From the NCBI GenBank assembly GCA_950097015.1, contig CATNEN010000029.1:2914001-2978000 (forward strand): a stretch of DNA of 64,000 nt. The letters are read 5' to 3'. Shown piece by piece: positions 5,544 through 27,749 of this stretch; positions within the stretch are counted from its first letter, which is position 1; every line of letters begins with the position of its first letter. The position numbers and the translations under genes are program-made. The notes under the pieces were generated by a model. That model was not told the DNA's origin, ran no database searches, and saw nothing but the letters and a program-made list of their open reading frames with translations. The stretch comes from Macrostomum hystrix (Eukaryota > Animalia > Platyhelminthes).

Positions 5544-6597
5544 TCACCGCACTCAGTCTCAGTGCTGCTTGGGGGCCAGTAGACAGTCTAGGGGTTTGGG
5601 CTGTGTACATTCACGGCTTGAAATACAATGTACAGTCTGGGGCTTCGGCGCCCGGGGAAGGGAGGGGGTGGCTGTAATAAAATTTGGCCCGCAGAGTGGC
5701 GGAGGGGAGTTGGGGTGGCTGTCCTCGGAAAACAAAAAGTGACTCACTTTGAGATGATGCAGCTTTGCTCTGGATTGAGTAGAGATGTTCAAAATTGACA
5801 GCATTGTTGGAAAACATGTAAAGTGTAAGTGGATCAAATTTGGAGAAAATCTGACAAAGTGGGGCGACGATATGTCGAATTGAGTGATTTTTTGACGATT
5901 TTTGAGCAGTTTTTTGCACTTTTGAGCAGGAAGGAAATGATTTTTCGGGAATTTGAGTAGCCTATTGCACTCAGCGTAGGTGGTTTTAGGTATGTGCAAA
6001 GTTTGGTGCGATTTGGTTGAGCGGTTTCGGCGTCTATAAAGACAAAAGGTTGCACACACACAGACAGACACACACACACACAGACAGAGTTTTCACTTTT
6101 ATATATATAGACTAGCTTTTTTTTGCCCGTTGTTTTTGGGGCAGAAATTTAAAGCAAAGCAGTAAGCAATTCACGTCTCTGTATTAACTTTATAGTGAAG
6201 GTCACCATTTATTTAAGTGAATTTATTTAAGTGAAATGAAAAGTGAAGAGTTTGTTTAAGGGCGTTTTAAGTAAAAAATAAGTGAAAAGTTTGTCCAAAC
6301 AGCCCCTCTTGATTACTTCTTTAGAAACATGTCTCTTAGCCACTCCTCTATACAGTCAGTGGCAGATCCAGGAATTTTGTTTTGGGGCGGTCTGTCAGGG
6401 GAGCGCCATGAGAATCACAGAGGGGGTGCCAGCGGCCGAAAAAGGGCGCCAGGAGCCAAGAAAGGGCGCCAGCGGCTGAAAAACGGGAGCCAGCGGCTGA
6501 AAAAGGGGCGCCAGCGGCCGAAAAGGGGCGCCAGTGCTGCGACTGGCGCCCCTGGTGGGGGCATCTTATTACCATGATTAAAATTTAGGGGGGCGAC

Positions 6598-8046: not shown

Positions 8047-9010
8047 TCACCTCAAGGCCTGGGGATACACCATATTCCTCGTTCTTCCCCTTGGTGCGAA
8101 AATGAATAGGCCAGCTGGAGTTCCAACACGGGAGCAGGCGACATAAAGCTGCCCATGCGAGAAGCAAGGAGTCTCCAGGTTGATGCCAGCCACCTTCAGC
8201 GACTGTCCCTGAGCCTTGTTAATAGTCATCGCAAAGCACACTCTCACAGGGAACTGCAGTCGCTTGAACTGAAATGGCAGGTCCGTGGGGATAATTGGAA
8301 TCCGGGAACGAACACAGACTCTCCTCTGCCAGATCCAGTCATTATCGTGGCCTCAATCACGTGTGGGAAGAGCCGCCTGACTATCAGTCTGGTGCCGTTA
8401 CACAGCCTTGGCGCATTCAGGTTGCGGAGGAGCATAATTGGTGCCCCAACTTTCAGCTGCAAGTTGTGCGATGGAGTTCCAGGAGGATCTAGAGAGTTCA
8501 GAAACTCAACAGGATACTCCACAGCGGTGTCATCAGTCAACGTTGTATCAATTGACTTGTAGGTGAAAACTGCACCTGGCAACTCCTGAAGCAGTTGGTA
8601 GTTAATTTCGTTGGCGGCATCATTTCTAGGACACAGAATTGCCCTCTCTGACAGCCAGTCAACGTCAGCATATCGAACCATTAGGTTCGGGTAAACTTTT
8701 GCCTTGAGCTCCTGCACTGACTGCACAATGGTTCCGATTGTAGCGATCGATGACTGCCCATCCTCGGTGCTAATCTCCAGCAGACCATTGCCGATTCGCA
8801 ATAGATTGGCAGAGAACTCATGAGCTGTTTCGTCTCCTTGAATTGTAGCTCTCATGTTTTGTTCGTAGGTGCAACTTCACAACCGATGGCCACAGGTGAG
8901 ATGATTTTAGGCAAGCATTAATCTCATCAGCAGGAGTGCCACGCGGAATCACAGGCAGCGTCTGTCTAAAGTCTCCAGACAGCAGCAGAGTGACACCACC
9001 CATCAGTTGA
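8047..9010 (-). pseudogene. Helitron PIF1 helicase fragment, unit 3, two frameshifts
   Basis: The same motifs are split over ORFs 8818..9096, 8244..8855 and 8047..8247. Confidence 0.8.
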
Positions 9011-10377
9011 TCGCCAGCCTCTCTCTTTCTTCTATCCCAGGCTGGCTGGAGAGAAATATCGACCGGAGAGCCCTGCGCACTGGGACGCCACCGCACTCAC
9101 CGCACTCAGTCTCAGTGCTGCTTGGGGGCCAGTAGACAGTCTAGGGGTTTGGGCTGTGTACATTCACGGCTTGAAATGCAATGTACAGTCTGGGGCTTCG
9201 GCGCCCGGGGAAGGGAGGGGGTGGCTGTAATAAAATTTGGCCCGCAGAGTGGCGTTGAGGGGAGTGAGGGGAGGGGAGTGAGGGAAGTGAGGGGAGTTGG
9301 GGTGGCTGTCCTCGGAAAACAAAAAGTGACTCACTTTGAGATGATGCAGCTTTGCTCTGGATTGAGTAGAGATGTTCAAAATTGACAGCATTGTTGGAAA
9401 ACATGTAAAGTGTAAGTGAATCAAATTTGGAGAAAATCTGACAAAGTGGGGCGACGATATGTCGAATTGAGTGATTTTTTGACGATTTTTGAGCAGTTTT
9501 TTGCACTTTTGAGCAGGAAGGAAATGATTTTTCGGGAATTTGAGTAGCCTATTGCACTCAGCGTAGGTGGTTTTAGGTATGTGCAAAGTTTGGTGCGATT
9601 TGGTTGAGCGGTTTCGGCGTCTATAAAGACAAAAGGTTGCACACACACAGACAGACAGACAGACAGAGTTTTCACTTTTATATATATAGATGTTTGGCCA
9701 GTCAACGACTGTTCTATTTTTAGTATCATATTTTCATAATCATTCATTTTCATCAGAACGCAAGGCAAAGCCATAACACTTTTGCCCTTTTGGCCAATAA
9801 GAGAAGTAGCGAAAATTCCTTTGTCCGAATTACACTTATATTTGGAGTAAAAAGTATAGATAAATGATTATAATGTTACTTTCACACATATGTATGCAAT
9901 TGGAGGGAAGAACATTTGGAGGGTTCCGCTTGTATGAAATATGATTTCCAACCCACGAGATTTGCATACTGATTGAGTATCACGTTGAGTATAACATACT
10001 GCAGTAATGAGAGACAAGTCCCCTAGCCGCTTATTAAAATTTTGAAACAGCAAACTACAAGTGTAAAGTAAAAATACACTGACTTTTTATGTACTAACCT
10101 GGCAAATAATTGTTTCTACTATGAAATCACTAAAACACATTTACCACACACAAAATTAATCAAAAATGGCATTGTTTTTATCAAAAAAACCGGATTATTC
10201 TATAAAAAAACCTCAGCGATACCTTCGACAGTAATAAGTGGATGCATTTTAGCATAACAAAAAAAAATTGATGTTAATTCGGATTGCTAATCTAGTCAAG
10301 TAAAAGAAGATTTGGTTAGATTAGCAATCCGTCGCATGTCTGCTCCGCCATTGCAAATAACATAGTCTATGGCCGGA

Positions 10378-13300
10378 TCACTCGATGGCAGGCATTGGCC
10401 CCACACCCGCTGCCAGCTGATAGACAGCTCCGGCCACGTCCAAGGCTAGTTGGTCGGCCAGCTCTCTAGTGGCGCCCTCGGCGTAAACCCGGACAACGTC
10501 CTCCGTGCCAGATGGTCGGACAAATGCTCGGCCGCGGTTGGTTGCCGACACCAGCGCGTCAATAGCCTGCTGAAGGCCGTCTGGCAGCACGCAGCGCCTC
10601 TCAGCATCGGTTGTGGTCACTGCGGACCGGTTGGCAACCGACACCTTCAGCTGACGGCTGGGCAGGTCCGTGTAGCAGGCGTTCCAGTCGGCTGCGCCCC
10701 AGCCGGCCTCGGCCAGGGCGTGCTCCACCAGCAGCAGCACCGAGACGGCGTCTCCCACCTCAACGGGTTGACGATGGGTGATCAGGCGGTAGTGAACTTC
10801 GCATCAGGTTTTATAGAAAATGATAGTAACCTTTCAGGACTGAATCCTAGCTCCTAATAATACGAGTATTCTTTGATTTCATGTGGTCAGAGCTACTGAC
10901 TTATGACCGAGTGGTCGCGAGTTCGAATCTCAGTTCTATGGAAATAGCTCATGTATTTCTTTACCTATAGTGCTTTAGTTTAGCCAGCTGTAAAATCTGT
11001 CTCAGCACTAACTGAGGGTAGGGATTTTGGTAGGTGTGGAGGCCTCCTCAGTTTACAGACTGAGCAGCTGGCTCAATTGGGGCAGGTGTAATTAATTATT
11101 ATTCTTAATATTGATCACAATATTCCAAAGCTATGCCTTACCGTCTCATTAATCAAGTCCATCACCAGGCGCAGCTCTGTAGCCGCTTCTCGCTTATCGT
11201 CGCCGTCGCCCTCAGCGGCTGCCAGAATGGCAGACCTGGCCCGTTCGCTAAACAGCACGGTGCCGTGTCCGTTGGCTTCGAAATAAACGCCAATGTCGTA
11301 ATCCTTGGCCCGCCGGTGCAGATGCTTCACTCCGGTTGGCACGCAGGCCACATCGACCCCCAGCTGCTCAGACAGGTAGCGAGTGGACTCGGCATTGGCG
11401 TAGGCCGTCTGCACCAGCCCGGTGTTCAGCTGCAGGCCGGCTGCTCGCGTGCGGCCAATCAGGTAGCCCGCGATCAGGGCCGCTTGCTTGTCCCCGTCCA
11501 GCATCTGCCAATGGGGTGGAGCCGGCCCCTTCATGATATTCCCAAATCTATCAGCCTGTCTATCCCCCACATCTATCAGCCTGTCTATCCCCCACATCTA
11601 TCAGCCTGTCTATCCCCCCCACATCTATCAGCCTGTCTATCCCCCTCCCCCACATCTATCAGCCTGTCTATCCCCCTCCCCCACATCTATCAGCCTGTCT
11701 ATCCCCCTCCCCCACATCTATCAGCCTGTCTATCCCCCACATCTATCAGCCTGTCTATCCCCCACATCTATCAGCCTGTCTATCCCCCACATTTATCAGA
11801 CTGTCTATCTCCCACATATAAATTTGAATTTATATGGTAAAAAAGAAGTTTTACCTGAAAATGACCAGCCGAATCCCTATAAAAATAGATAATTCTATCA
11901 GCGTCGCCGTCAAACGATGCCCAACGCTGGCAGCGCTGGAATTCGAGTCCACGACCTTCCGGGAAGCGCATTTGTACTTTTACGAAATCGGCGCCGCACC
12001 TAGTTTTTTTGTGAGAAAGACTGGTTTAAGGAATACTTTGGGCTGGGATCGAACTCCAGACCTCTCGGTTAATAAATGCAAAGACAAGCATATGTACAAA
12101 TACGCACCTGTAGTTCAGCCGGCCCTCGCCCTGATTATGCACAACCAGGCGCAGGTGGCTGCCCAACAGTGGAGCCAGCTGAGCCAGCGCCCCGGCTCCC
12201 ACGCCGTTGGCGGCGTCGATGTGTACACAGCGGGCGTCGCCGCTGACGCCTACGCCGCGTCGTTCTCGTCGTTCAGCTAGCCGGACAAAGGCTCCGGCGA
12301 GTTTCTCGGCGTAGCCGTCCAGACTAGGCCTTCCGTAGGCCGGGTTGTTAGTGCAGGCCACAATGTAGTGCAGCTGTGGCGTGGTCAGCTCGCCCAGCAG
12401 CTCCGGCACCGCAGGCGAGTAGTCGTCATCGGCGTCGCCTTCTTCGCCGCCGGCCTCAACAATGGGATTGCAGGCGCGAACGCCGGCGGCGACAGCCTCG
12501 GCTAGGCCGGGCGATGATTGGCGGGAGTCGTGGCCAATCAGAACGCGACCGGGCCTGCGATGGAAGAAAGGCGTGGTGATGACTAATTCTTATATTTAAA
12601 ATTTTTCTATCCCTTACTTATCCCTAACAGTAGCGTAGCGACGATTTTTGTCAAGGGGGTGGGGGGTTTGGGGGCGCCACTATGGCCACTACTCGTACTA
12701 GTGCGCGCCACATGGTTTCGTCAGACAATTAGGCCGGTGGCTACGCCCCTGACTCCCTAAAGAGCTACAAAGACGATCGATTCCCATTAATAAATAAATA
12801 ATCTAAAATCCTATATCCTAAAAAGAAATTGACCCTCGATTCGAAATCCACGATTCCAGATCCTGATTTATCTAAGATAAAACATGGATTCTAAATCCCT
12901 ATCACTAAACAGTGATCCTCAATTAAAAAATAATCCCTATTTTTTTTACTTTTCTTTTGATTTTTCAATCCTTAATCTGAAAAACGAACCATCTTTTTAA
13001 GTCTTACCTATTTTAATATTAATCCTCAATTCCAAATCTAAAATCCATCCTTAACTCTAAATCCCCGATTACTGAATTTTCTGTTTATTTGAAAATATCA
13101 TATCGTCAGAGATTGATAATAAATCATAAATCCCCGATTCCTTAATTGTAATCTCCGTGCCTCACCTGGCCACAAACTGAGCCGTAGTGACAGCCCGGCT
13201 GTCGTGAAGGGTGCTGAGGAGGACGTGCAGGTGATTGCGCAACTCGGTGTCTAGAGCATTCACCAAGCCGCTGGCCACGGGCTCCCACTCCACCGGCAGC

Positions 13301-13617
13301 ATGTCGCCATTGGGCTCCACCAGTTTCACGCCGTTGTCCTGCTCCGGATTGTGGCTGGCCGTCACCATAACGCCCACAGTTTGACCGTTGAGGGCGCGAG
13401 ACCGCAGGGCGGCAAGCACGCCCATGCGGAACATGATGTAGTCCATCTGGCCGGCGTCCGCGCGCATTCGAAAGCCGGCCGTGCCATAGGTCACGTGACC
13501 GTGAAGCTGCGGATGCCGGTATTTGCCGCCGGCCGCCGAGTGGCAAACGGACTTCACCAGAGCGTCGACTGAGGCTGGCGCTGGCAGCACCGCCGAGTTT
13601 CTGTGCGATGAGGCCGA
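10378..13617 (-). CDS. PGM3: Phosphoacetylglucosamine mutase (PGM3/AGM1); exons 13617..13166, 12554..12108, 11999..11855, 11504..11142, 10758..10378; no ATG at the 5' end
   Basis: TYGTAGFR, catalytic TASHNP, LTTPQLHY, metal-binding SFDGDADR, GVYFEANGHGT and RAFVRPSGTEDVVRVYAE are present. All GT-AG junctions keep the frame. Confidence 0.93.
11545..11810. repeat. 25-bp minisatellite (CCCCCACATCTATCAGCCTGTCTAT) in PGM3 intron 3
   Basis: About 10 visible tandem units. Confidence 0.9.
12628..12751. mobile_element. Small hAT-like MITE in PGM3 intron 1
   Basis: Ends CAGTAGCGTAGC / GCTACGCCCCTG; both flanks contain TCCCTAA (imperfect TSD). Confidence 0.55.
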
Positions 13618-13645
13618 CTGAAAGCACGAGGCGAATTAGCGCTGA
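13618..13645 (-). promoter_or_regulatory. 3' splice acceptor (cis or trans) at the head of the PGM3 ORF
   Basis: Minus strand reads GCTAAT (branch-point-like) TCGCCTCGTGCTTTCAG|TCG GCC TCA, in frame with PGM3. In-frame TAA at 13638-13636. Confidence 0.7.
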
Positions 13646-13685
13646 TTTTCACTTAAGATGACGGAATGTCTGGAGACAGGCACTG

Positions 13686-16600
13686 GTTGACAGATAAGAG
13701 TTGACTGATGTTGATTGACAGATAGGATTTGACTGATGTTGATTGACAGATAGGATTTGACTGATGTTGATTGACAGATAGGATTTGACTGATTTTGACT
13801 GACAGATAGGATTTGACTGATTTTGACCGACAGATAAGAGTTGAATGATGTTGACTGACAGATAGGATTTGACTGATGTTGATTGACAGATAGGATTTGA
13901 CTAATGTTGATTGACAGATAGGATTTGACTGATGTTGATTGACAGATAGGATTTGACTGATGTTGATTGACAGATAGGATTTGACTGATGTTGATTGACA
14001 GATAGGATTTGACTGATGTTGATTGACAGATAGGATTTGACTGATTTTGACTGACAGATAGGATTTGACTGATGTTGATTGACAGATAGGATTTGACTGA
14101 TGTTGATTGACAGATAGGATTTGACTGATGTTGATTGACAGATAGGATTTGACTGATTTTGACTGACAGATAGGATTTGACTGATTTTGACCGACAGATA
14201 AGAGTTGAATGATGTTGACTGACAGATAGGATTTGACTGATGTTGATTGATAGATAGGATTTGACTGATGTTGATTGATAGATAGGATTTGACTGATGTT
14301 GATTGACAGATAGGTTTTGACTGATGTTGATTGACAGATAGGATTTGACTGATGTTGATTGACAGATAGGATTCGACTGATGTTGATTGACAGATAGGAT
14401 TTGACTGATGTTGATTGACAGATAGGATTTGACTGATGTTGATTGATAGATAGGATTTGACTGATGTTGATTGATAGATAGGATTTGACTGATGTTGATT
14501 GACAGATAGGATTTGACTGATGTTGATTGACAGATAGGATTTGACTGATGTTGATTGACAGATAGGATTTGACTGATTTTGACTGACAGATAGGATTTGA
14601 CTGATTTTGACCGACAGATAAGAGTTGAATGATGTTGATTGACAGATAGGATTTGACTGATTTTGACTGACAGATAGGATTTGACTGATGTTGACTGACA
14701 GATAAGAGTTGAATGATGTTGACTGACAGATAGGATTTGACTGATTTTGACTGACAGATAGGATTTGACTGATGTTGATTGACAGATAGGATTTGACTGA
14801 TGTTGATTGACAGATAGGATTTGACTGATGTTGATTGACAGATAGGATTTGACTGATGTTGATTGACAGATAGGATTTGACTGATTTTGACCTGACAGAT
14901 AAGAGTTGAATGATGTTGATTGACAGATAGGATTTGACTGATGTTGATTGACAGATAGGATTTGACTGATGTTGATTGACAGATAGGATTTGACTGATTT
15001 TGACTGACAGATAGGATTTGACTGATGTTGATTGACAGATAGGATTTGACTGATGTTGATTGACAGATAGGATTTGACTGATGTTGATTGACAGATAGGA
15101 TTTGACTGATTTTGACTGACAGATAGGATTTGACTGATTTTGACCGACAGATAAGAGTTGAATGATGTTGACTGACAGATAGGATTTGACTGATGTTGAT
15201 TGATAGATAGGATTTGACTGATGTTGATTGATAGATAGGATTTGACTGATGTTGATTGACAGATAGGTTTTGACTGATGTTGATTGACAGATAGGATTTG
15301 ACTGATGTTGATTGACAGATAGGATTCGACTGATGTTGATTGACAGATAGGATTTGACTGATGTTGATTGACAGATAGGATTTGACTGATGTTGATTGAT
15401 AGATAGGATTTGACTGATGTTGATTGATAGATAGGATTTGACTGATGTTGATTGACAGATAGGATTTGACTGATGTTGATTGACAGATAGGATTTGACTG
15501 ATGTTGATTGACAGATAGGATTTGACTGATTTTGACTGACAGATAGGATTTGACTGATGTTGATTGACAGATAAGAGTCGAATGATGTTGATTGACAGAT
15601 AAGAGTTGAATGATGTTGATTGACAGATAGGAGTTGAATGATGTTGACTGACAGATAGGATTTGACTGATGTTGATTGACAGATAGGATTTGACTGATTT
15701 TGACTGACAGATAGGATTTGAATGATGTTGATTGACAGATAAGAGTTGAATGATGTTGATTGACAGATAGGATTTGACTGATGTTGATTGACAGATAAGA
15801 GTTGAATGATGTTGATTGACAGATAGGATTCGACTGATGTTGATTGACAGATAGGATTTGACTGATTTGACTGACAGATAGGATTTGACTGATGTTGATT
15901 GACAGATAGATTTGACTGATGTTGATTGACAGATAGGATTTGACTGATGTTGATTGACAGATAAGATTTGACTGATGTTGATTGACAGATAAGAGTTGAA
16001 TGATGTTGATTGACAGATAGGATTTGACTGATGTTGATTGACAGATAGGATTTGACTGATGTTGATTGACAGATAGGATTTGACTGATGTTGATTGACAG
16101 ATAGGATTTGACTGATGTTGATTGACAGATAGGATTTGACTGATGTTGATTGATAGATAGGATTTGACTGATGTTGATTGATAGATAGGATTTGACTGAT
16201 GTTGATTGACAGATAGGATTTGACTGATGTTGATTGACAGATAGGATTTGACTGATGTTGATTGACAGATAGGATTTGACTGATTTTGACTGACAGATAG
16301 GATTTGACTGATTTTGACCGACAGATAAGAGTTGAATGATGTTGATTGACAGATAGGATTTGACTGATTTTGACTGACAGATAGGATTTGACTGATGTTG
16401 ACTGACAGATAAGAGTTGAATGATGTTGACTGACAGATAGGATTTGACTGATTTTGACTGACAGATAAGAGTTGAATGATGTTGATTGACAGATAGGATT
16501 TGACTGATTTTGACTGACAGATAGGATTTGACTGATTTTGACTGACAGATAAGAGTTGAATGATGTTGACTGACAGATAGGATTTGACTGATGTTGATTG

Positions 16601-17740
16601 ACAGATAGGATTTGACTGATGTTGATTGACAGATAGGATTTGACTGATGTTGATTGATAGATAGGATTTGACTGATGTTGATTGATAGATAGGATTTGAC
16701 TGATGTTGATTGACAGATAGGATTTGACTGATGTTGATTGACAGATAGGATTTGACTGATGTTGATTGACAGATAGGATTCGACTGATGTTGATTGACAG
16801 ATAGGATTTGACTGATGTTGATTGACAGATAGGATTTGACTGATGTTGATTGACAGATAGGATTTGACTGATGTTGATTGACAGATAGGATTTGACTGAT
16901 GTTGATTGACAGATAGGATTTGACTGATGTTGATTGACAGATAGGATTTGACTGATGTTGATTGACAGATAGGATTTGACTGATGTTGATTGATAGATAG
17001 GATTTGACTGATGTTGATTGATAGATAGGATTTGACTGATGTTGATTGACAGATAGGTTTTGACTGATGTTGATTGACAGATAGGATTTGACTGATGTTG
17101 ATTGACAGATAGGATTCGACTGATGTTGATTGACAGATAGGATTTGACTGATGTTGATTGACAGATAGGATTTGACTGATGTTGATTGATAGATAGGATT
17201 TACTGACAGATAGACACTGATTGACAGATGGGAACTGACAGACACTGATTGACAGATGGGAACTGACAGACACTGATTGACAGATGGGAACTGACAGACA
17301 CTGATTGACAGATGGGAACTGACAGACACTGATTGACAGATGGGAACTGACAGACACTGATTGACAGATGGGAACTGACAGACACTGATTGACAGATGGG
17401 AACTGACAGACACTGATTGACTGATGGGAACTGACAGACACTGATTGACAGATGGGAACTGACAGACACTGATTGACAGATGGGAACTGACAGACACTGA
17501 TTGACAGATGGGAACTGACAGACACTGATTGACAGATGGGAACTGACAGACACTGATTGACAGATGGGAACTGACAGACACTGATTGACAGATGGGAACT
17601 GACAGACACTGATTGACAGATGGGAACTGACAGACACTGATTGACTGATGGGAACTGACAGATGGGAACTGACAGACACTGATTGACAGATGGGAACTGA
17701 CAGACACTGATTGACAGATGGGAACTGACAGACACTGATT
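13686..17740. repeat. 28-bp satellite with two sub-arrays: GACTGATGTTGATTGACAGATAGGATTT (to about 17204) and GACAGACACTGATTGACAGATGGGAACT (about 17205-17740)
   Basis: Tandem units are directly visible. The 1391-aa and 1280-aa ORFs are by-products of the repeat. Confidence 0.97.
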
Positions 17741-18210
17741 CACAGAAATCTCTCACTGACAAGGTCAGATTTACAAAAGCTGTAAACTTCCCAGTTCTAC
17801 GTAGAGAATAAATGCAAATGACTGACACAGCATAATAAGACTTTAATTAGTGCAATGATTGTGTATAAAAACAAAAAATGACGTTTATTGTCTATTTATA
17901 ACAAATGCCTGTAGAGATAAATTGTAAACATGCACAAGAACAAGTTTAGCACCAAAATTATAATTGCTTTAATAATTTATAAGTGGATAAAAATTAAAAA
18001 AGAGCTTAAGTTTAAACGCAACAGAAAGTAAAATACAGTGATACAATGAAAAAATAAATGAAAGATTTTTAACAACTGTGAGTATAATTAAACTGACTTA
18101 ATAGAGCAAAAAATGCGAACCCTTACATTGCTTGAAGACCATTGTGCTAAAAAGTGTCAAACAAAGTCACACAAGAAAGAAGCAAGATAAACAGAGCCTT
18201 TGACGTCGGC

Positions 18211-21200
18211 TCATTTGGCAGCTGTTTTGTTGTCCTTGAAAGCAGTTAGTTTGCGCAGAGAACGCCGATGAACTATTAGTTTGCATCGCGGACACTGCTT
18301 GATTCCCTGCGGATAAGACAAGAGAGAATGGTCAAGGGTCGTAGGTTTAATTCTTGATTCGAACTCATGACCTCTAGAAATTATTCAGCAATGTAGATAA
18401 GGCGCTCACCACTTCCATAATTGAGCGCCAGCAGAGGAAGCAGCAGACGTGATCGCAGGGAGCAGCCAGCGGTGTGTCAGCGTCGCTTGTTTCGCAAGAT
18501 TCGCATCTCATTCCAGACTCTGGAGATCATTGCGGCAAGATGTATAGATTTGCGCAAGTATGCCTACTCCAAGTAGGCTACGCGAATTTAAAGAAATCAT
18601 ATGGAAAAATCGAAAGGATAAAGGGAACAGAGAGACTAGACTTGCGAGTGAATGAGTGAGTGAGAGACTAGATAAGTGAGAGACAAGATAGGTAAGAGAC
18701 TAGATAAGTGAGAGACTAGATAAGTGAGAGACTAGATAAGCGAGAGACTAGATAAGTGAGAGACTAGATTTAGGAGAAAGATATTAGAAGTTGAGAACTC
18801 ACTTAGACGTTTCGCTGGCGGTCTCAGCGAGGCTCCATCGTCATCCTCGTCGCTGTCGCTGCTATCAGCCTTGCCATCATCCGTCTTGGAGGCAGTTTCG
18901 GACGACCTGGCGGCAGCGAATGCTGCGGACGCGTTGCCTTTAGTAATCGAGGCAACAGCGGCGGCCAACCTGGTGGCAGCCACCTCGGCCAGACGGTCGC
19001 AGCACTGCCTGTACCTGGCCTTGTCCGGCGTGCGGACCAGGCGGCCAAGACCGGCCAATAGCTGCCGGACCGCGTCCGGATCGCCGCGCGGCCCGCCTGA
19101 CGCCGCCAAGTCGGCAGCCGATTGAAAGATTTCAGATAGGCGACCAATTAGCCTGTCAATACCGCCAGATGATTTATAATCGGCCAGCGCCGAGCGAAAC
19201 CTGGCCCGCTCGCCTTGGCCGAGAGCGCGCTGCAAATTGACGCGCAGTTCGGATACTTCCGGCGACGGCGACGGCGATTGTGGAGCCAACCGCGGTGAAG
19301 CCGACTTAGACGGCGTTGTTGGCGTCGGCGACTGTGTCGATGGCGACGAATTTATCGTCGAAGCTGACGAAGACGTGCCGCCGGAAATTCGAATACGGCG
19401 TCGAGAATTCGGCGGCGCGGATGTCGGCACCTTGAACTCCGAGTCGGCAGCGGGGGCTGTGGCGGGGGCGGTGGCGGAATCCACCTTTCTGACGGCGTAA
19501 TCGGCAGACTCTTTGAATGAGACATGTTTCTGGCGTGTCGTGCCGGCTGCGTGCTGTTTCGACTCGACACTTTGGCTAGATTTATGTTCCATGTCTTCCT
19601 GTTGATGTGTGTGTTTGGTAGGGCATCTTGCTTAACAAAACATTTTAACAAAGCAATAACAAAATGTTTTTGTTCCAAAATAGATGGTAGATCTAACAGA
19701 TGAGACAACGTCTTACAGGGGTGAAGCTGCTGTGTAACAATTAAGGCAGCTTTACGAAAGGGGAGAACTGCTGTTTAACAGGTGAGACTGAGGTCCAACA
19801 GGTGAGAACTGGTGTCCAACAGGTGAGAACTGCTGTCCAACAGGTGAGACTGAGATCAAACAAGTCAGGCGGTTGTCTAACTGCCGTTTCGCAGGTGAGA
19901 ACTGTTGTCTAACAGGTCAGGCGGTTGTCTAGCAGGTGAGGCGGCTGTCCAACCGCTGCGAACTGCTGTCAAAAAAACATTTAAGCACAAATTAATAAAG
20001 AATACTGAACTTTCACTTACTTCGTGCTGTTTGAGCCTGTCTCCCAGGCTGGTCTTATTTGAGTCCGAGTTCTCCTTGTTGATATCCGGGGTGCAGTAGA
20101 GATTAGCTAATTCGTCTAAGGCGGGAGATTTCTCTGTAAATTGCCAATCAAAGAAATGCAATAGGATTTCAAAATGAAATCGGCTGTAAAAATGATTGTC
20201 CTTTACCGTAGCTATGCAGGAAGTCAACTAGACTGCCGGCCCGTCCGCCGCCAATCAGAGGCGATACAGAGCCGCCATAGACGGGGCCGCCCTGACTAGG
20301 CCGATGCTGCTGACGACTGCCGGAGCCGAATTCGATAGCCATGAGCTGGCTATCGAGCTGCATCGGCTGGCGTTGCGCAGTATCGCGTATCTTCGGCCCG
20401 TCCGGGGTCGGATATTTCACACTGTTGGCAGAGAAGAATTCTCGCAGTCGCACCGGTATGGATTCGAATGATTTTGCCACGGTCACCGAGTGCTGCAGCC
20501 AGGCTGGCAGTTGGCGTCGTAGATTCATCGGTAGCGAAGCGTTCGTCGCACAGTAGAACGGCGCCGTAGTCGTTTCGATGACGCAGGACCCGACCAATGG
20601 CCTGATTGACGGCGCGATAGGCCTGCTGCTTGTACCTGCGAGATGAGCGTGGCGGCGACAATCCAGGACCTGCTCATCCACTCACCCCAGGACCTGCTCA
20701 CCCACTCACCCATCCAGAGCTGCTCACCCACTCACCAATCGAGGAGCTGGTTACCCACTCACCAATCCAGGAGCTGGTTACCCACTCACAAATCCAGGAG
20801 CTGGTTACCCACTCACCAATCCAGGAGCTGGTTACCCACTCACCAATCCAGGAGCTGGTTACCCACTCACCAATCCAGAAGCTGGTTACCCACTCACCAA
20901 TCCAGGAGCTGGTTACCCACTCACCAATCCAGGAGCTGGTTACCCACTCACCAATCCAGGAGCTGGTTACCCACTCACCAATCCAGGAGCTGGTTACCCA
21001 CTCACAAATCCAGTAGCTGGTTACCCACCAATCCAGGAGCTGGTTACCCACTCACCAATCCAGGAGCTGGTTACCCACTCACCAATCCAGGAGCTGCCCA
21101 CTCACCAATCCAGGAGCTGCTTACTCACCAATCCAGGAGCTGCTCACGCATCAATCCAGGAGCTGCTCACCCACCCTCCAATCCAGGAGTTGCTCACTCA

Positions 21201-24200
21201 CCAATCCAGGAGCTGCTCACTCACCAATCCAGGAGCTGCTTACTCACCAATCCAGGAGCTGCTCACGCATCAATCCAGGAGCTGCTCACGCATCAATCCA
21301 GGAGCTGCTTACCCACCCTCCAATCCAGGAGTTGCTCACCCTACTCACTAATCCAAGAGCTGCTCACTCACCAATCCAGGAGTTGCTCACCCTACTCACC
21401 ATTGCTTAATAATAATTGCAGCAGGGCTGCGGGCAGTGGCACACCATTTGGTGACACTAGACCCGCAACCAGCGAGGATGGGGCAATTCTGGCCATTTCG
21501 CTGACTCCTGAGCACACACGCACACAGATACTGTACGCAGGCATACGCTCACACAGGTGTGTACATCTGCCCTGACTTTCTCATCGTCAGGCAGTGTACA
21601 TTTCCCTGTGCCTTGGAGGTTAGGCCCCTAAGAGGCGTAAATTGCACGACAAGCCCTCAAGCCTTCTCTCCGCGGCTGCGCCCCAAATAATGTGGCCTCG
21701 CCGTGGAATCGAACTTAGGGACCGTGGTGCGAGAGACAAACGCGATAACCGCTCTGCCACCGACCCCTCACCATTGCTTGCCAGTGATGCCTCGCCCAGT
21801 GGCCAGCCGTCTCTCATCTAGCCAGGCCTGCTTGAGTCGCACTCTCGGATCTGTCCACATAGGATAGGGCAGGCCGGTAACCACAACGGCTCGGCCAAAG
21901 TGATCAGCAAAGTCCAGGCCTTCGCTAACCTTGCCGCGGCAGACGGCCAAGAAGATGGCGCCAGAGTATTGCGGATCGCAGACTCGCTTATAATAATCGG
22001 CGAAAGCGACGGCGAATTCCGCCTTTCGGCGAGGCTCAACAAACACCGGCTTGCGGGCGCTAATGCGATCGAACAGTCGATTAGATCGCCAGGCATCTAG
22101 GCAGCGGGACAGCAAGGAATAGGACGGGAAGAATACTAGGAGGCCGTGGGGCACGCAGCCGCACAGTGTCACAATGCATTCGCCTAGGGCGCGTTGATAA
22201 TCAAGCGAGTCCCGATTCTCGTAGCCGGAGCTCAGCCTGACCGAGCCAGGACCTCGCGGCACCACAGTAGTGACAATCTGGTCCTTATTGATCACATGCG
22301 GATTGCTGAGCTCGATTGGAAACGGCAGCTGCAGATCGTGACGCAGCGACTCCATGGGGTAGAGGGTGCCGCTAGTGAGGATGATGGAGCGAACGCCGTG
22401 AGCGGCCAAGTCCAGCATAGCCTTGGCCGGCGAGAAGCACCAGTAGGAGAGCAGGCGGTACGGCTTGCCGCTGGCGGCGACGCCGGAGCTGGCGCTGGCG
22501 GCGGTGTCGAAGCCGATAGCGGGCGCCGCTGCAGCCGATTGGCCGCCAGGCGTCGATCTGCCCGCCACCTCGCGGATGTGCAATTTGTAGCAATGCGCCA
22601 AGCCGATGCTCGAAGGCGCGCCGCCGCGACGTTTAGGCGCCGACGAGGACGAAGAAGCGCCGGACGGATCGCCGAAGGAGGCCTCTGGAAACACTCCGGC
22701 GATGAATTCGCTCAGCCGGGTGAGGCCGGTGCCGCGGAACAGGCGGCCTGGTACGGCGAGAACGGTAGGGAAAAATATAGATCGAATTGGATGAGTAATG
22801 TAACAAGGGAGATAAACAAGAATAAGATGTACGAGGTAAAAAGACACGCAATTAGAAGTCGTTTGAGAAACAATTAAGTCGCTTAAAAAGCGGTCAAGGG
22901 TTGGGGAAAATGATAAGCCAAAAAAATTCGCTAGAGAAGCGTTACAGTCATTAGAAAAGCGTTTGAGTCGTTAGAGAAGCGTTGAAGGCGTTAGAGAAGC
23001 GTTTGAGTCGCAGGAAAAGCGTTTGAGCCAATAAAAAAGCGTTTGAGTCGCAGGAAAAGCGTTTGAGTCGTTTGAGAAGCTTTTGAGTCGCTAGAAAGGC
23101 GTTCTAGTCGCAGGAGAAGCGGTTGAGTCGTCTGAGAAGCGTTTGATTCGATAGAGAAGTGTTTGAGTCGTTAGAGAAGCGTTTGAGTCGTTAAAAAAGC
23201 GTTCCATCGAGATTGAGAGTGGAGACGAAGCAGCAGAGGATTTACCCTGAGTAGCGGACATAAACGCCAATATCTTGTCCAGCCGGTCCAGCATGTGTGC
23301 CACCCTGTGAGCCGAGATGTCCGCCTGGCCCAACAGTTCGAAAACGAATGCGCCCGGCCTAGTGAAGCCTGGTCCAGCGTCGCCACTGCCCAACGGGATG
23401 CAGTCAATGGCCTTCTCCAGCGCCAATAATTGGCCCTTCAAAGCAAATAGATCAGACACGGTGAAGTCCAGGCTCTCTTGAGCTTCGACACCGCTGAGCT
23501 CTTCTAAACTGAGACTGCTGGCCTGCTGGTCCGCGGTGATCTTCTTCATCAGATTACTGACGGCGGCGTCAATTTCAAAGATGCACTGGGCTAGATCTAC
23601 TGAGCTTAACTCGACTGAGGCGCCGTCTTCGCACACTTGCTCCTGCGGCGGTGCGGGTAACGACAAACCATCTAGGGTCATCTAGGTTTGTCAAATGATT
23701 ACTAATTCAGAATCGGAAGCTAATTGCTTACAATATTGTGCGCCTCGTCTAGGATAACCACGTTGCCCTCAAGGTCGATTTTGTTGCGATAGCGAACCTT
23801 TAAAAATATTTAATTGTATGTTATAGACCGGCTATTGCGGAAAACGGTTTTCTATTGGAAATCTCTGAGACGGATTGTGTTCGATAGAGGACAATTCTCT
23901 ATTTTATAAAGATGATTCTCTACTGGATAGAGAAAATTCTCTAATTGATAGAGATGATTCTCTACTGGATAGAGACTATTCTCTATTTGATAAAGATGAT
24001 TCTCTACTGGATAGAGACAATTCACTATATGATAAATATTATTCTCTACTGGATAGAGACAATTCACTATTTGATAAATATTGTTCTCTACTGGATAGAG
24101 ACAATTCACTATTTGATAAAGATGATTGTCTACGGGATAGAGACAATTCTCTATTTGATAAAGATGATTCTCTACTGGATAGAGACAATTCTCTATTTGA

Positions 24201-26295
24201 TAAAGATGATTCTCTACTGGATAGAGACAATTCACTATTTGATAAAGATGATTGTCTACGGGATAGAGACAATTCACTATTTGATAAAGATGATTGTCTA
24301 CTGGATAGAGACAATTTTATATTCGATAAAGAAAATTATCTACTCGATAGAGACAATTCTCTATATGATAAAGATGATTCTCTACTGGATAGAGACGATT
24401 CTCCATTAAATAGAGGCGATTCTCTATACGATTCTCTATCAGAGATGCGGCTTAGCGTCACGTGTTACTTAATTATCGTAATTTCAAGTAAAGTCTTAGA
24501 CGGCACCATAAATTGCAAACTATTTCTCACCTTAGGATCCAGCAGATAGTTATAGGGCATAAATATCACATCAGCTGATTCCTTTTGATCCCGCGACAAA
24601 TAGTAAGGGCAGCACCTAGTTCGCTTGCCGTAGTCAGCTAGATCCTCGATGTCCATAATCTTGTTGCTGAGCGGCGGCGCCGGCGTGGCATCTTTGTCAT
24701 TCTTTGGACGAAGCGCTAAAGAAAAATGGCATACGATTGCTACTCAAAAACTCTAAATTTTATATAATATAATTCAATTTGCTTGTTCTCTTACAATCGT
24801 ACTGTATGTAGTACTGGCAGGATCTAGTCTCGACGCGCACTTTGCAGTTTATCATTTTAGCGGCGTTCGATTCCAACTGTTGGACATCTTCGTTGATGCA
24901 CAGCTGATCGCGAGATCCGATTATGGCTACCTTGTGGCTGCAGTTTTTTGGTATGAAAGTAGAGGCTTGAATCGGTTGTGGTGGGATTTACAGATGGAGA
25001 GAGTAGACACAGATGGAGAGTGTAGATACAGGTGGAGAGAGTAGACACAGATGGAGAGTGTAGATACAGGTGGAGAGAGTAGATACAGGTGGAGAGAGTA
25101 GATACAGGTGGAGAGAGTAGATACAGGTGGAGACAGTAGATACAGGTGGAGAGAGTAGATACAGGTGGAGAGAGTAGATACAGGTGGAGAGAGTAGATAC
25201 AGGTGGAGAGAGTAGATACAGGTGGAGAGAGTAGATACAGGTGGAGAGAGTAGATACAGGTGGAGAGAGTAGATACAGGTGGAGAGAGTAGATACAGATG
25301 GAGAGAGTAGATACAGATGGAGACAGTAGATACAGGTGGAGAGAGTAGATACAGGTGGAGAGAGTAGATACAGGTGGAGAGAGTAGATACAGATGGAGAC
25401 AGTAGATACAGGTGGAGAGAGCAGATACAGATGGAGACAGTAGATACAGGTGGAGAGAGTAGATACAGGTGGAGAGAGTAGATACAGGTGGAGACAGTAG
25501 ATACAGATGGAGACAGTAGATACAGATGGAGACAGTAGATACAGGTGGAGACAGTAGATACAGATGGAGACAGTAGATACAGGTGGAGAGAGTAGATACA
25601 GGTGGAGAGAGTAGATACAGGTGGAGAGAGTAGATACAGGTGGAGAGAGTAGATACAAGTGAGAGAGTATATGCAAGTGAAGAGAGTATATACAGGTGGG
25701 GTAAATATGGCTGGGGAGAGAGAGAGAGACAAGTGGGCAGACAAGTCGGTGTAGGAAGAGAGTAGAGACCAAAACGGATTCAGAGTGAATTATGAAATGC
25801 CAGTAAATCTCACTTAGTGTAAACTGTTCGCCTCAACTCATGCATGGCCTGAGACAGTTGGCTGTGCGTCCTAGACGCATAAATAATCCTGGGCGCGCCG
25901 CGTACCGGATCCCAGGCGCCGGCGGTCTCGGCGAAGCCACGCTCCAATTCGGCCACCAGCTCGGCGGTGGCGTCGCTGTCGCCGCGGCTGCCGGCTGAAG
26001 CTGCCTGAATGTTGAAGGCCTGCTGTCTGGCCTTCATTGCAGCCTGCCAGGCTAGGGCGGCGCAGAGCAGTGACAAACTTTTGCCTGTGCCAGTAGGAGA
26101 TTCTAGCAGAGCATTCTGACCAGTCTGTAATTTAATCATTTCCAATTTTCAGCTTCAAAGCAAGAGCAAATTACAGAATAATTGACCGCTTACCTGCAAA
26201 GCTTCCAACACTTTGCTCATGTAATCCACCTGGCATGGATACGGTTCGAATGGGAAGCACACATCAATGCCCTTGATTCGAATTTGGCTAGTCAT
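18211..26295 (-). CDS. RTEL1: RTEL1 Fe-S helicase with harmonin-homology domain and C-terminal RING; exons 26295..26194, 26124..25814, 24937..24795, 24715..24531, 23797..23732, 23642..23246, 22747..21772, 20635..20207, 20133..20021, 19598..18803, 18519..18410, 18306..18211; apparent +1 frameshift near 20523
   Basis: [57 protein letters not shown] and [18 protein letters not shown]-like [31 protein letters not shown]-x2-C..C-x-H-x2-C-x2-C..CPRC. The junctions I traced are GT-AG and phase-compatible. Confidence 0.9.
18655..18770. repeat. 16-bp minisatellite (GAGACTAGATAAGTGA) in RTEL1 intron 10
   Basis: About 7 tandem units. Confidence 0.85.
19780..19945. repeat. Degenerate ~21-bp repeat (AACAGGTGAGAACTGCTGTCC) in RTEL1 intron 9
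   Basis: AACAGGTGAG recurs at about 20-bp spacing. Confidence 0.7.
20670..21400. repeat. 27-bp minisatellite (CACTCACCAATCCAGGAGCTGGTTACC) in RTEL1 intron 7
   Basis: Tandem units; each reads TG|GTGAGT on the gene strand. Confidence 0.93.
21408..21766 (-). mobile_element. tRNA-derived SINE, full length, 13-bp TSD
   Basis: Head GGTGGCAGAGCGG (A box) and GTTCGATTC (B box); (ATT)n tail; TSD CTCACCATTGCTT at 21395-21407 and 21767-21779. Confidence 0.88.
22925..23195. repeat. 20-bp minisatellite (GTTTGAGTCGTTAGAGAAGC) in RTEL1 intron 6
   Basis: About 13 degenerate units. Confidence 0.85.
23900..24430. repeat. 42-bp (2x21) minisatellite in RTEL1 intron 4
   Basis: Unit GATAGAGACAATTCTCTATTTGATAAAGATGATTCTCTACTG; the [17 protein letters not shown] periodicity is 14 aa. 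Confidence 0.9.
24990..25690. repeat. 19-bp minisatellite (GGAGAGAGTAGATACAGGT) in RTEL1 intron 2
   Basis: About 36 tandem units. Confidence 0.93.
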
Positions 26296-27749
26296 TATTG
26301 TTAATAATAGCTGGCACTCTTCATAAGTACTAGGCCAGTAGTAGAAACGCTGTTGCTACAGACCCACTGTCAGATCCTTTACAGATGATCTGTTATGCTG
26401 AGGGTATGCTGAAATTTAATAATTTGTTTTTAATAAGATCCCTCTTACTTAAAATAAGCCTAAAACTTTAGGTTAATGTAGTAACAATAATAATATATGC
26501 AAGAGGGCTGTGGGCACTAATACTTAATTTAGTGACAGTAGGCCTACACCTAGCAATAGTTAATTCTGCCCATTTCACTGACTAGTAACATACAAGTTGC
26601 AAACAGATGTAGATTAATTATAGACATGTTTACATTTACATAGAGATGCAAATTAACACTCACAGTGTAAATTATCACTTTGACTTCTGATGGTTGGCCT
26701 TTAGTGTATAGAATATACCATAAACTCGACAAGCTTTTGGCTGCAGCCCAAAATGACTATGGCCTTACCACAATTATGAGCTCAGGAAACTTTATTACAA
26801 AGTAAACCATTAGTAGGCCAACAAATTCTTTGTGTTAGATTATAAAAGAGCTAACTGTTGTGACTAAACTATATACTGAATGTTGATGAACTTTCAGGTT
26901 AGCATCAATTTATTTTAGAATTAATACAGATGACAGAGTAGTTCAAGCTAATCTGTGCTTAGAAGATTAAAGATTATTTAAACCTATGGATTTTTATATG
27001 AGTATGCTATTGTGGTTCTTTACAAACAACCTAGGATGCTGGATACTATCCTTGGATCCCAATTAGAATAAGTGGTATTTTTTGCAGATTTCATTGAGTG
27101 AATTTTCATGTGTTATCATGACACATGGCATGCATAGTCAGGATACAAGAATTTGATTCATTATGCATATAGTGGCCAGTGTAATACCAAACAATGATAT
27201 AAAACATGTAATTGGAGGAAGTCAATAGCATAATAGAAATTCCTCAAACTGTAGTGTAAGCAAAGCTTGTTTCATACTTTCTTCAGTCATGTGCCATGAT
27301 GCACTACCTAGGACTAGGTCAGGATGCGAGAAGAACTTGACTAACCATGTATTATATGTAGCAGTCAATGCTCCCAAACAAGGACAAGTTCAAGCATGTA
27401 TAAGAGGAGGTCAACAAAAAGCAAAATAGAAATTCATCAAACTGTAACTGTTTAAGCCTAACGAATTTATTGCAAGGTTCAACACAGTGTTCAATTAGCA
27501 TTTTTCTGCTTTCCAGTTTGGCTAGGCCTTAATATTTAAGAGAAAGAATGTTCTTAAAAATTATAAGTCACAGTCAGTTATGAGCTAACTTGTGTTTAAT
27601 AAGCCATTTATCACATTTATCAAGTTACAGAGACTAGAATTAAATAAATGTGCAATACTACGTGGATCCTGAAGTACTATGTCACCTAAAGGTTTGCAAT
27701 TTACAATGACACTATACATACTAGTCTTATTATGATTTAAAAAGGCAGA

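What the first reader, a model, noticed from the sequence alone, without database searches (positions are those of the whole stretch)
13590..18211. ATG-less PGM3 directly downstream of RTEL1: candidate operon with the start codon supplied by a spliced leader
Seen: the PGM3 frame begins exactly at an acceptor (branch-like CTAAT, pyrimidine tract, TTTCAG|TCG GCC TCA, phase 0). There is an in-frame TAA 7 codons upstream. The first internal ATG lies after the conserved YGTAGFR motif, so it would truncate the enzyme. Upstream on the same strand are only ~60 nt, a 4-kb satellite, ~130 nt with a U-rich tract, and the RTEL1 3' UTR (AATAAA at 17889-17884). I found no ATG-bearing exon or promoter-like sequence there. 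Established: flatworm spliced leaders end in AUG, which can act as the initiator, and SL trans-splicing resolves polycistronic RNA. Inference: RTEL1-PGM3 is a dicistron, PGM3 starts M-S-A-S-S-H-R with an SL-derived Met, and the intercistronic region has expanded to more than 4 kb of satellite.
Basis: partly seen in the sequence, partly recalled or inferred. Interest (0 to 1): 0.8.

Follow-up and report, generated by a model that had tools for sequence, protein, structure and literature searches.

The report
Spliced leader gives PGM3 its start codon
In this Macrostomum-type flatworm the sugar-metabolism gene PGM3 has no start codon of its own, and RNA data show it receives one from the AUG ending the trans-spliced leader, a mechanism already known in flatworms; whether it is co-transcribed with the upstream gene RTEL1 across a 4-kb satellite is plausible but not shown.

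Summary
On the minus strand, PGM3 (phosphoacetylglucosamine mutase) begins at a TTTCAG acceptor, with its first coding base at 13617. There is an in-frame TAA 7 codons upstream, and no in-frame ATG before residue 51, which lies after YGTAGFR.

Transcript contigs from four runs of one study are spliced at four GT..AG introns. They continue past 13618 with the last 23 nt of the Macrostomum spliced leader (...GCGAAGACTCAATTTATTGCATG). This places the leader's ATG directly in frame with TCG GCC TCA. The genome carries at least 23 exact SL RNA genes (SL-ATG|GTAAG, three hairpins, Sm-like site).

So trans-splicing and an in-frame SL AUG are shown. Use of that AUG as the initiator is a strong inference: it is the first AUG, the next one is out of frame, and coding-type GC3 starts at the acceptor.

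The operon claim is not shown. The RTEL1 poly(A) signal and the PGM3 acceptor are 4,266 nt apart. About 4,060 nt of that is a 28-bp minisatellite found essentially only at this locus. The repeat-adjusted distance of about 190 nt meets the published M. lignano operon criterion, but I have no RNA evidence across the spacer.

The scan has already confirmed SL-donated start codons elsewhere in this genome (for example CHMP6). This is a new member of a known kind.

The parts
13618..13623 (-). SL trans-splice acceptor TTTCAG (AG at 13619-13618). It matches the published M. lignano trans-acceptor motif YTNCAG.
   Evidence: Sequence. SL-bearing contigs end here in 4 runs. Motif from PMC8629364; motif scan.
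13635..13639 (-). Branch-point-like CTAAT, 16-20 nt upstream of the AG. It contains the in-frame TAA (13638-13636) that closes the frame upstream.
   Evidence: The branch-point role is inferred only.
13166..13617 (-). PGM3 exon 1 (452 nt). It begins TCG GCC TCA (S-A-S) and has no genomic ATG before residue 51. It contains YGTAGFR and the active-site loop TASHNP.
12108..12554 (-). PGM3 exon 2.
   Evidence: Joints; open frame.
11855..11999 (-). PGM3 exon 3 (contains DGDADR).
11142..11504 (-). PGM3 exon 4 (contains EANGHGT).
10378..10758 (-). PGM3 exon 5 with stop codon (contains RPSGTEDVVRVYAE; PGM_PMM_IV).
9791..10377 (-). PGM3 3' UTR. Contigs run about 109 nt beyond 9900; the end is approximate.
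   Evidence: table 8.
13618..13686 (-). Unique 69 nt between the satellite and the acceptor. It is removed by trans-splicing (end of the outron or intercistronic RNA). No contig covers it.
   Evidence: (depth of the last bin).
13687..17221 (-). 28-bp minisatellite, variant A (sense unit TCAACATCAGTCAAATCCTATCTGTCAA), about 126 copies. The sense strand is G-poor.
17222..17746 (-). 28-bp minisatellite, variant B (sense unit ATCAGTGTCTGTCAGTTCCCATCTGTCA), about 19 copies. It matches variant A at 21 of 28 positions.
17747..17883 (-). Unique spacer after the RTEL1 poly(A) signal. It holds a T-rich run, one ATTAAA (17847), one ATG (17833, short closed frame) and one GTRAG (17756).
17884..17889 (-). 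AATAAA, the likely RTEL1 poly(A) signal. The 3' end itself was not mapped.
   Evidence: inferred.
18211..26294 (-). RTEL1 gene. It has its own ATG at 26294-26292 ([22 protein letters not shown]...). It carries DEAD_2, ARCH_RTEL1 and Helicase_C_2 domains and a C-terminal RING finger. Stop codon at 18213-18211. Its introns hold several minisatellites.

Best explanation
PGM3 (AGM1, phosphoacetylglucosamine mutase) is a five-exon gene on the minus strand whose genomic coding sequence starts at codon 2.

Shown: the pre-mRNA is trans-spliced at the TTTCAG acceptor (first exon base 13617) to the 35-nt Macrostomum spliced leader. That leader ends in AUG, so the mature mRNA reads ...UUAUUGCAUG|UCG GCC UCA.

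Inferred: ribosomes start at this leader AUG and make a 596-aa enzyme beginning M-S-A-S-S-H-R.

Inferred, roughly even odds: the RNA upstream of the acceptor, including the 4-kb locus-specific minisatellite, is discarded. Most likely it is the intercistronic part of an RTEL1-PGM3 polycistronic precursor. The original spacer of about 190 nt would have been inflated by in-situ amplification of a 28-bp piece.
For: RNA evidence:
- in four runs, contigs of 1.9-2.4 kb lie on all five exons with four GT..AG joints. All run on beyond 13618 with the + strand letters ATGCAATAAATTGAGTCTTCGC. The reverse complement, plus the shared G at 13618, equals the last 23 nt of the leader CGGTCTCTTACTGCGAAGACTCAATTTATTGCATG published for M. 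lignano (PMC8629364).

SL RNA genes:
- 23 exact copies of that leader in this genome, against 0 in the reversed control.
- the leader is followed by GTAAGA. The 109-nt gene folds into three hairpins with a U-rich Sm-like site (z = -3.6).

Reading frame and start codon:
- the five exons give 595 open codons. In the mature mRNA the SL AUG is the first AUG. The next AUG is out of frame (41-aa ORF). The first genomic in-frame Met is residue 51, after YGTAGFR (44-50).
- codons 1-26 have GC 64% and GC3 73%, the same as the whole CDS. The 69 nt upstream are 49% GC and the UTRs 29-34%.
- solved AGM1 structures and homologues align from about residue 27-35, and all carry 23-70 residues before YGTAGFR. 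The enzyme therefore needs sequence that lies upstream of any genomic ATG.

Operon:
- RTEL1 lies upstream on the same strand, with no gene on either strand in between.
- The downstream gene is SL trans-spliced.
- The repeat-adjusted distance is about 190 nt, under the 1-kb published criterion. The same paper reports that repeats inflate operon spacers.
- The sense strand of the 4,266-nt spacer has no AATAAA, one ATG and one GTRAG.
- RTEL1 introns also tolerate 0.1-0.75-kb minisatellites.
Against: - No protein-level evidence shows that the SL AUG is used. Its context (U at -3, U at +4) is not a strong Kozak context by vertebrate standards.
- The RNA evidence comes from assembled contigs of one study, not raw reads. 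Minor isoforms with another 5' end would be missed.
- For the operon there is no RNA evidence at all over 13619-18211.
- The raw distance of 4.27 kb is far above the roughly 100-nt mode of flatworm and nematode operons.
- About 60% of trans-spliced M. lignano genes are not in operons.
- A TATAAATA at 17899-17892 and the satellite itself could belong to a separate promoter.
Confidence: 0.85

Rival explanations
1. PGM3 is monocistronic. It has its own promoter, either in the roughly 137-nt unique spacer after the RTEL1 poly(A) signal or inside or next to the satellite. The transcript begins with an outron of up to about 4.2 kb, which is removed by SL trans-splicing. The SL still supplies the AUG. 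RTEL1 is only a neighbour.
For: By the published count, about 60% of trans-spliced M. lignano genes are not in operons. The raw distance is 4.27 kb. TATAAATA at 17899-17892 would place a start near 17865. No contig bridges the two genes.
Against: I recognised no promoter in the 69 nt next to the acceptor. The repeat-adjusted spacing of about 190 nt falls in the operon mode of the published bimodal distribution. TATA-like strings are expected by chance in a 29%-GC 3' UTR.
Confidence: 0.4
2. The SL AUG is in frame by chance (one in three). Translation really starts elsewhere: at a near-cognate codon such as GTG at 13590, or at Met51.
For: The SL AUG has a weak vertebrate-type context. A GTG-initiated ORF from 13590 is listed mechanically.
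Against: The SL AUG is the first AUG and is in frame with no stop. The next AUG is out of frame and would divert scanning ribosomes. Met51 lies after the invariant YGTAGFR strand, so that product would lack a conserved part of domain I. Coding-type GC3 starts at the acceptor.
Confidence: 0.05
3. The main PGM3 mRNA has a cis-spliced upstream exon with its own ATG, and the SL form is a minor isoform.
For: Contigs drop rare or alternative variants (caveat printed).
Against: All four runs assembled only the SL-joined form. The only sense-strand ATG in the 4,266 nt upstream (17833) opens a frame that closes before the only GTRAG donor.
Confidence: 0.03

Closest known systems
[quoted passage not shown]
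   Same: The leader ends in AUG and is joined directly in front of codon 2 of a conserved ORF that has no AUG of its own. The AUG is in frame with no intervening stop.
   Different: The organism is a free-living macrostomid and the gene is PGM3/AGM1. Translation from the SL AUG was not tested here.
Macrostomum lignano SL trans-splicing and distance-defined operons (Ustyantsev and Berezikov 2021, PMC8629364). The SL is conserved in M. cliftonense and M. hystrix and is noted there as likely carrying the start codon (Wiberg et al. 2023, PMC10468722).
   Same: The 35-nt leader is identical. The acceptor fits YTNCAG. The pair is same-strand with the downstream gene trans-spliced. The repeat-adjusted spacer is under 1 kb. 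Repeats inflating operon spacers is already reported there.
   Different: Here the repeat is a single array of about 4.06 kb and about 145 copies, found essentially only at this locus. That is much larger than the spacer it sits in. Co-transcription at this locus is unverified.
C. elegans operons resolved by SL2
   Same: A polycistronic precursor is cut into monocistronic mRNAs by 3'-end formation plus SL trans-splicing. There is a U-rich stretch after the upstream poly(A) signal.
   Different: Nematodes use a dedicated SL2 and spacers of about 100 nt, and their leaders do not donate the start codon. Flatworms use one SL for both operonic and monocistronic genes, so the SL type cannot diagnose an operon.

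Membership tests
mRNA with SL-donated initiator AUG (flatworm type) | The organism has SL RNA genes whose leader exon ends in AUG, followed by a GU donor, an Sm-like site and hairpins. | tested here: met
   23 exact leader copies against 0 in the control. ...TTGCATG|GTAAGA. Three-hairpin fold, z = -3.6.
mRNA with SL-donated initiator AUG (flatworm type) | The leader is found joined to the gene's acceptor in RNA. | tested here: met
   Contigs in 4 runs of 1 study carry the last 23 nt of the SL at 13618/13617.
mRNA with SL-donated initiator AUG (flatworm type) | The SL AUG is in frame with the conserved ORF, with no stop between and no genomic in-frame AUG upstream of the conserved domain. | tested here: met
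   ATG|TCG GCC..., 596-aa ORF. The first genomic Met is residue 51, after YGTAGFR. The frame is closed by TAA 7 codons upstream in the genome.
mRNA with SL-donated initiator AUG (flatworm type) | The protein is actually initiated at the SL AUG. | not testable with these tools
   This needs N-terminal proteomics, ribosome profiling or a reporter. Indirect support only.
SL-resolved operon (polycistronic transcription unit) | Adjacent genes lie on the same strand with nothing between them, and the downstream gene is SL trans-spliced. | tested here: met
SL-resolved operon (polycistronic transcription unit) | Short intercistronic distance (mode about 100 nt; published M. lignano cut-off under 1 kb after subtracting repeats). 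| tested here: inconclusive
   The raw distance is about 4,266 nt from AATAAA to the acceptor. After removing the 4,060-nt array it is about 190-206 nt. It passes only on the repeat-adjusted measure.
SL-resolved operon (polycistronic transcription unit) | One primary transcript spans both genes and there is no internal promoter. | not tested
The satellite was not sent because the tool turns long repeats away. No contig covers 13619-13686.
Phosphoacetylglucosamine mutase (PGM3/AGM1, alpha-D-phosphohexomutase superfamily) | Four-domain architecture with the active-site Ser loop TASHNP, the metal loop DGDADR, the sugar loop E-x-NGHG and the phosphate loop RPSGTE. | tested here: met
   All four motifs are in the exon translations. 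Pfam PGM_PMM_I and PGM_PMM_IV. PDB AGM1 2dka E = 6e-27 for exon 1.

The most novel reading that the evidence does not exclude
RTEL1 and PGM3 really are one polycistronic unit. RNA polymerase II then has to read through about 4 kb (about 145 copies) of a locus-specific minisatellite after RTEL1 3'-end cleavage before it reaches the PGM3 trans-splice site. That would be a natural case of an operon spacer inflated roughly 20-fold without loss of an essential downstream gene. It would imply that flatworm operons lack the tight spacing constraint seen in nematodes. It would also imply that array length could tune the ratio of downstream to upstream expression.
Probability: 0.45. Interest if true: 0.45.

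Novelty: new member of a known kind. Interest (0 to 1): 0.3.

Why it matters
For annotation: PGM3 here, like other genes in this genome, cannot be given a correct protein model from genomic DNA alone. Gene callers will truncate it at Met51 or invent an exon. The correct N-terminus needs the leader's AUG.

For biology: it adds a conserved, essential metabolic enzyme (UDP-GlcNAc synthesis) to the set of flatworm genes that depend on trans-splicing to be translatable at all.

The open part is whether the 4-kb locus-specific minisatellite lies inside a working polycistronic unit. This locus makes that directly testable, and it bears on how much spacing flatworm operons tolerate.

Tried and rejected
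1. Cross-species check of the N-terminus and of RTEL1-PGM3 synteny failed.
   - The search of protein representatives with exon 1 returned only distant PGM3s. The top hit was 56% identical and none exceeded 68%.
   - Two profile searches with the search for homologous proteins used the exons as separate rows beside a full-length scaffold protein. They surfaced only red-algal, protist and vertebrate PGM3s and no Macrostomum protein. In hindsight these were poor value.
   - The look-up of encoding contigs says that records of the window's genome or a very near one may be left out. P0098, whose N-terminus MSASS... looked similar, is encoded on a 2.3-kb JGI metagenome contig, and I did not pursue it.
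2. The joined (spliced) PGM3 protein was never sent to a search tool. The exons were joined only inside a script to check frame and count ATGs. Look-ups that need the exact full-length product were therefore left out.
3. The satellite (13687-17746) and the RTEL1 3' end were not sent to read laying, because that tool turns long repeats away and only one call was allowed. There is therefore no RNA evidence for or against read-through.
4. A cis exon in the upstream 4.27 kb was rejected. The one sense ATG (17833) has a closed frame before the only GTRAG.
5. The 1,391-aa 'ORF' at 13653-17828 was rejected as an artefact. A 28-bp unit that lacks stops in one frame repeats every 84 nt.
6. Species name: a literature search did not settle which Macrostomum species the 220-Mb assembly is. 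I leave it as Macrostomum-type with an M. lignano-identical leader.
Full report
**What is in the sequence**

Everything relevant is on the minus strand.

- Searches show ...GCGCTAATTCGCCTCGTGCTTTCAG|TCGGCCTCATCGCAC. The AG is at 13619-13618 and the first exon base is at 13617.
- An in-frame TAA lies at 13638-13636, inside the branch-like CTAAT.
- From 13617 the frame runs S-A-S-S-H-R-N-S-A-V-L-P-A-P-A-S-V-D-A-L-V-K-...-Y-G-T-A-G-F-R.
- Upstream come 69 unique nt, then a 28-bp tandem array (13687-17746, TRF score 6148, 94% matches). After the array come 137 nt with a T-rich run, then AATAAA at 17889-17884.
- Next is a 3' UTR of about 320 nt at 29% GC, and then the stop codon of the upstream gene at 18213-18211.

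That upstream gene is RTEL1.

- Its exons hit DEAD_2, ARCH_RTEL1 and Helicase_C_2.
- Its last two exons encode a RING finger.
- It has its own ATG at 26294 ([22 protein letters not shown]).

The only corrections are the gap sizes, 69 and 137 nt.

**The organism and its leader**

I tested this independently.

- I took the 35-nt M. lignano leader from Ustyantsev and Berezikov 2021 (PMC8629364) and searched the window's own assembly.
- It has 23 exact copies and 49 within two mismatches. The reversed control gives 0.
- Many copies sit in arrays with spacing of about 11.6 kb.
- A copy reads CGGTCTCTTACTGCGAAGACTCAATTTATTGCATG|GTAAGACACC....
- The 109-nt gene folds into three hairpins, with the donor paired in stem I and a U-rich Sm-like site between hairpins 2 and 3. 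The energy is -32.6 kcal/mol, z = -3.6.

So the refuting condition 'an organism without an AUG-ending leader' does not apply.

**RNA evidence**

The look-up of sequencing runs gave four runs of one study that hold about half of the sampled words of 12000-13686. That share is what a spliced mRNA would give. I laid them on 9900-13686.

- Each run has one contig of 1.9-2.4 kb lying on five blocks, joined across four skipped segments with CT..AC ends (GT..AG on the minus strand).
- Every contig continues beyond 13618 with 22 loose letters, ATGCAATAAATTGAGTCTTCGC on the + strand.
- The reverse complement, followed by the G at 13618 (which fits both the genome and the leader), is GCGAAGACTCAATTTATTGCATG. 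These are the last 23 nt of the leader.
- The mature mRNA therefore reads ...UUGCAUG|UCGGCCUCA.
- Contigs stop 23 nt into the leader. I take this to be because thousands of mRNAs share it.
- No contig covers 13619-13686. The depth in the last bin is exactly what coverage up to 13618 would give.

Trans-splicing at the predicted acceptor, with the AUG in phase 0, is thus shown. The limits are that these are assembled contigs and that they come from a single study.

**Gene model and the start codon**

With GT..AG-adjusted boundaries the exons are:

| Exon | Coordinates (minus strand) |
|---|---|
| 1 | 13617-13166 |
| 2 | 12554-12108 |
| 3 | 11999-11855 |
| 4 | 11504-11142 |
| 5 | 10758-10378 |

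Together they give 595 open codons plus a stop. The model has the PGM3/AGM1 hallmarks TASHNP, DGDADR, EANGHG and RPSGTEDVVRVYAE. It hits Pfam PGM_PMM_I and PGM_PMM_IV, and exon 1 matches C. albicans and Aspergillus AGM1 structures at E = 6e-27 and 4e-25.

Four points support the leader AUG as the initiator.

- In the mature mRNA the leader AUG (nt 33-35) is the first AUG and opens the 596-codon frame.
- The next AUG (nt 166) is out of frame and opens a 41-codon ORF.
- The first genomic in-frame Met is residue 51, after the invariant YGTAGFR.
- Homologues all carry 23-70 residues before YGTAGFR, and their alignments to this exon start around residues 14-43.
- Codons 1-26 have the same composition as the rest of the CDS (GC 64%, GC3 73%). 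The 69 nt upstream are 49% GC, introns 37-50% and UTRs 29-34%.

From this I infer that translation starts at the leader AUG. I did not show it. I put the probability at about 0.9. This is the mechanism described for schistosomes by Cheng et al. 2006 (cited in PMC12582326). Wiberg et al. 2023 already suspected it for Macrostomum (PMC10468722).

**The satellite**

- The array has two 28-bp unit variants that match at 21 of 28 positions.
- Variant B lies on the RTEL1 side (17222-17746, about 19 copies). Variant A lies on the PGM3 side (13687-17221, about 126 copies).
- Genome-wide pattern searches at up to 2 mismatches found 108 A-type and 18 B-type matches. Every listed match lies in this array; 8 A-type matches were not listed. 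All are on the minus strand.
- It is therefore a locus-specific minisatellite, not a dispersed family.
- The sequences flanking the array resemble the units, which suggests that a piece of the native spacer was amplified in place.
- The sense strand is 9% G. Between AATAAA and the acceptor it has no AATAAA, one ATTAAA (17847, next to the RTEL1 end), one ATG, one GTRAG and only three YTNCAG matches, the last being the real acceptor.
- This is compatible with harmless transcription through the array. Because one unit is copied about 145 times, it counts as a single observation, not as statistical support.
- RTEL1's own introns hold arrays of 16-, 19-, 27- and 42-bp units up to 0.75 kb long. Transcribed non-coding DNA at this locus clearly tolerates such arrays.

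**The operon question**

What supports it:

- The two genes lie on the same strand with nothing between them.
- The downstream gene is SL trans-spliced.
- After subtracting the array, the distance from the RTEL1 poly(A) signal to the acceptor is about 190-206 nt.
- Ustyantsev and Berezikov define M. lignano operons by exactly this repeat-adjusted measure (under 1 kb). They report that repeats inflate operon spacers.

What is missing:

- There is no RNA that bridges the two genes, and no mapping of the RTEL1 3' end or of transcription starts.
- Flatworms use one leader for operonic and monocistronic genes, so the leader itself does not discriminate.
- By the same paper, about 60% of trans-spliced genes are not in operons.
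- The raw distance is 4.27 kb.
- A TATAAATA sits at 17899-17892.

I put the operon at about 0.5 and an independent promoter with a long outron at about 0.4.

**What failed**

Attempts to bring in orthologous loci or proteins from other Macrostomum species failed. The look-up tools appear to withhold records of the window's genome and near relatives.

**Verdict**

The mechanism is already known in flatworms. This scan has already confirmed it for other genes of this same genome, for example CHMP6 and a mitochondrial tyrosyl-tRNA synthetase. It is therefore a new member of a known kind.

The dicistron with a satellite-expanded spacer remains a reasonable, testable hypothesis. It matches a published genome-wide pattern, but it is not demonstrated here.

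Noticed in passing
L005:1838-2000 (-) and L005:1427-1535 (-); arrays on G000 contigs C15, C17 and C42: Each SL RNA gene copy in the tandem arrays (spacing about 11.6 kb) has a full-length U1 snRNA gene (Rfam RF00003, 151.7 bits) about 300 nt upstream on the same strand. SL RNA and U1 are therefore linked in one repeat unit.
   Followed up: partly
window 18659-18769, 20659-21401, 22928-23203, 23883-24426, 24989-25699: RTEL1 introns are full of minisatellites (16-, 27-, 20/60-, 42- and 19-bp units, up to 37 copies). The sense strand of the 27-bp unit contains GTGAGT, so a donor-like motif is repeated about 29 times just after an exon. This recalls the 'arrays made of donor junctions' noted elsewhere in this window (s1-366079).
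   Followed up: partly
window 2327-3383, 4503-5543, 8244-9096 (-): Three near-identical copies of a PIF1-like helicase fragment (Pfam PIF1 and Pif1_2B_dom), probably from a Helitron-type element. They are arranged in tandem with a repeated companion segment (3390-3890, 5559-6077, 9164-9646), directly downstream of the PGM3 3' UTR.
   Followed up: partly
window 13653-17828 (-): A 1,391-codon 'ORF' runs through the whole satellite. It is a mechanical consequence of a 28-bp unit without stops in that frame, not a gene.
   Followed up: yes
window 13687-17221: Variant units of the array recur at offsets of about 950-953 nt (about 34 units). For example, the TCGAATCC and CTATCAA variants recur at that spacing. 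This suggests growth by duplication of multi-unit blocks.
   Followed up: partly
window 26300-26420 (-): Upstream of the RTEL1 ATG (26294) there is an ATTTCAG acceptor-like site near 26415 and a short upstream ATG-TAA frame. RTEL1 itself may be SL trans-spliced with a non-coding use of the leader AUG. No RNA evidence was examined.
   Followed up: no
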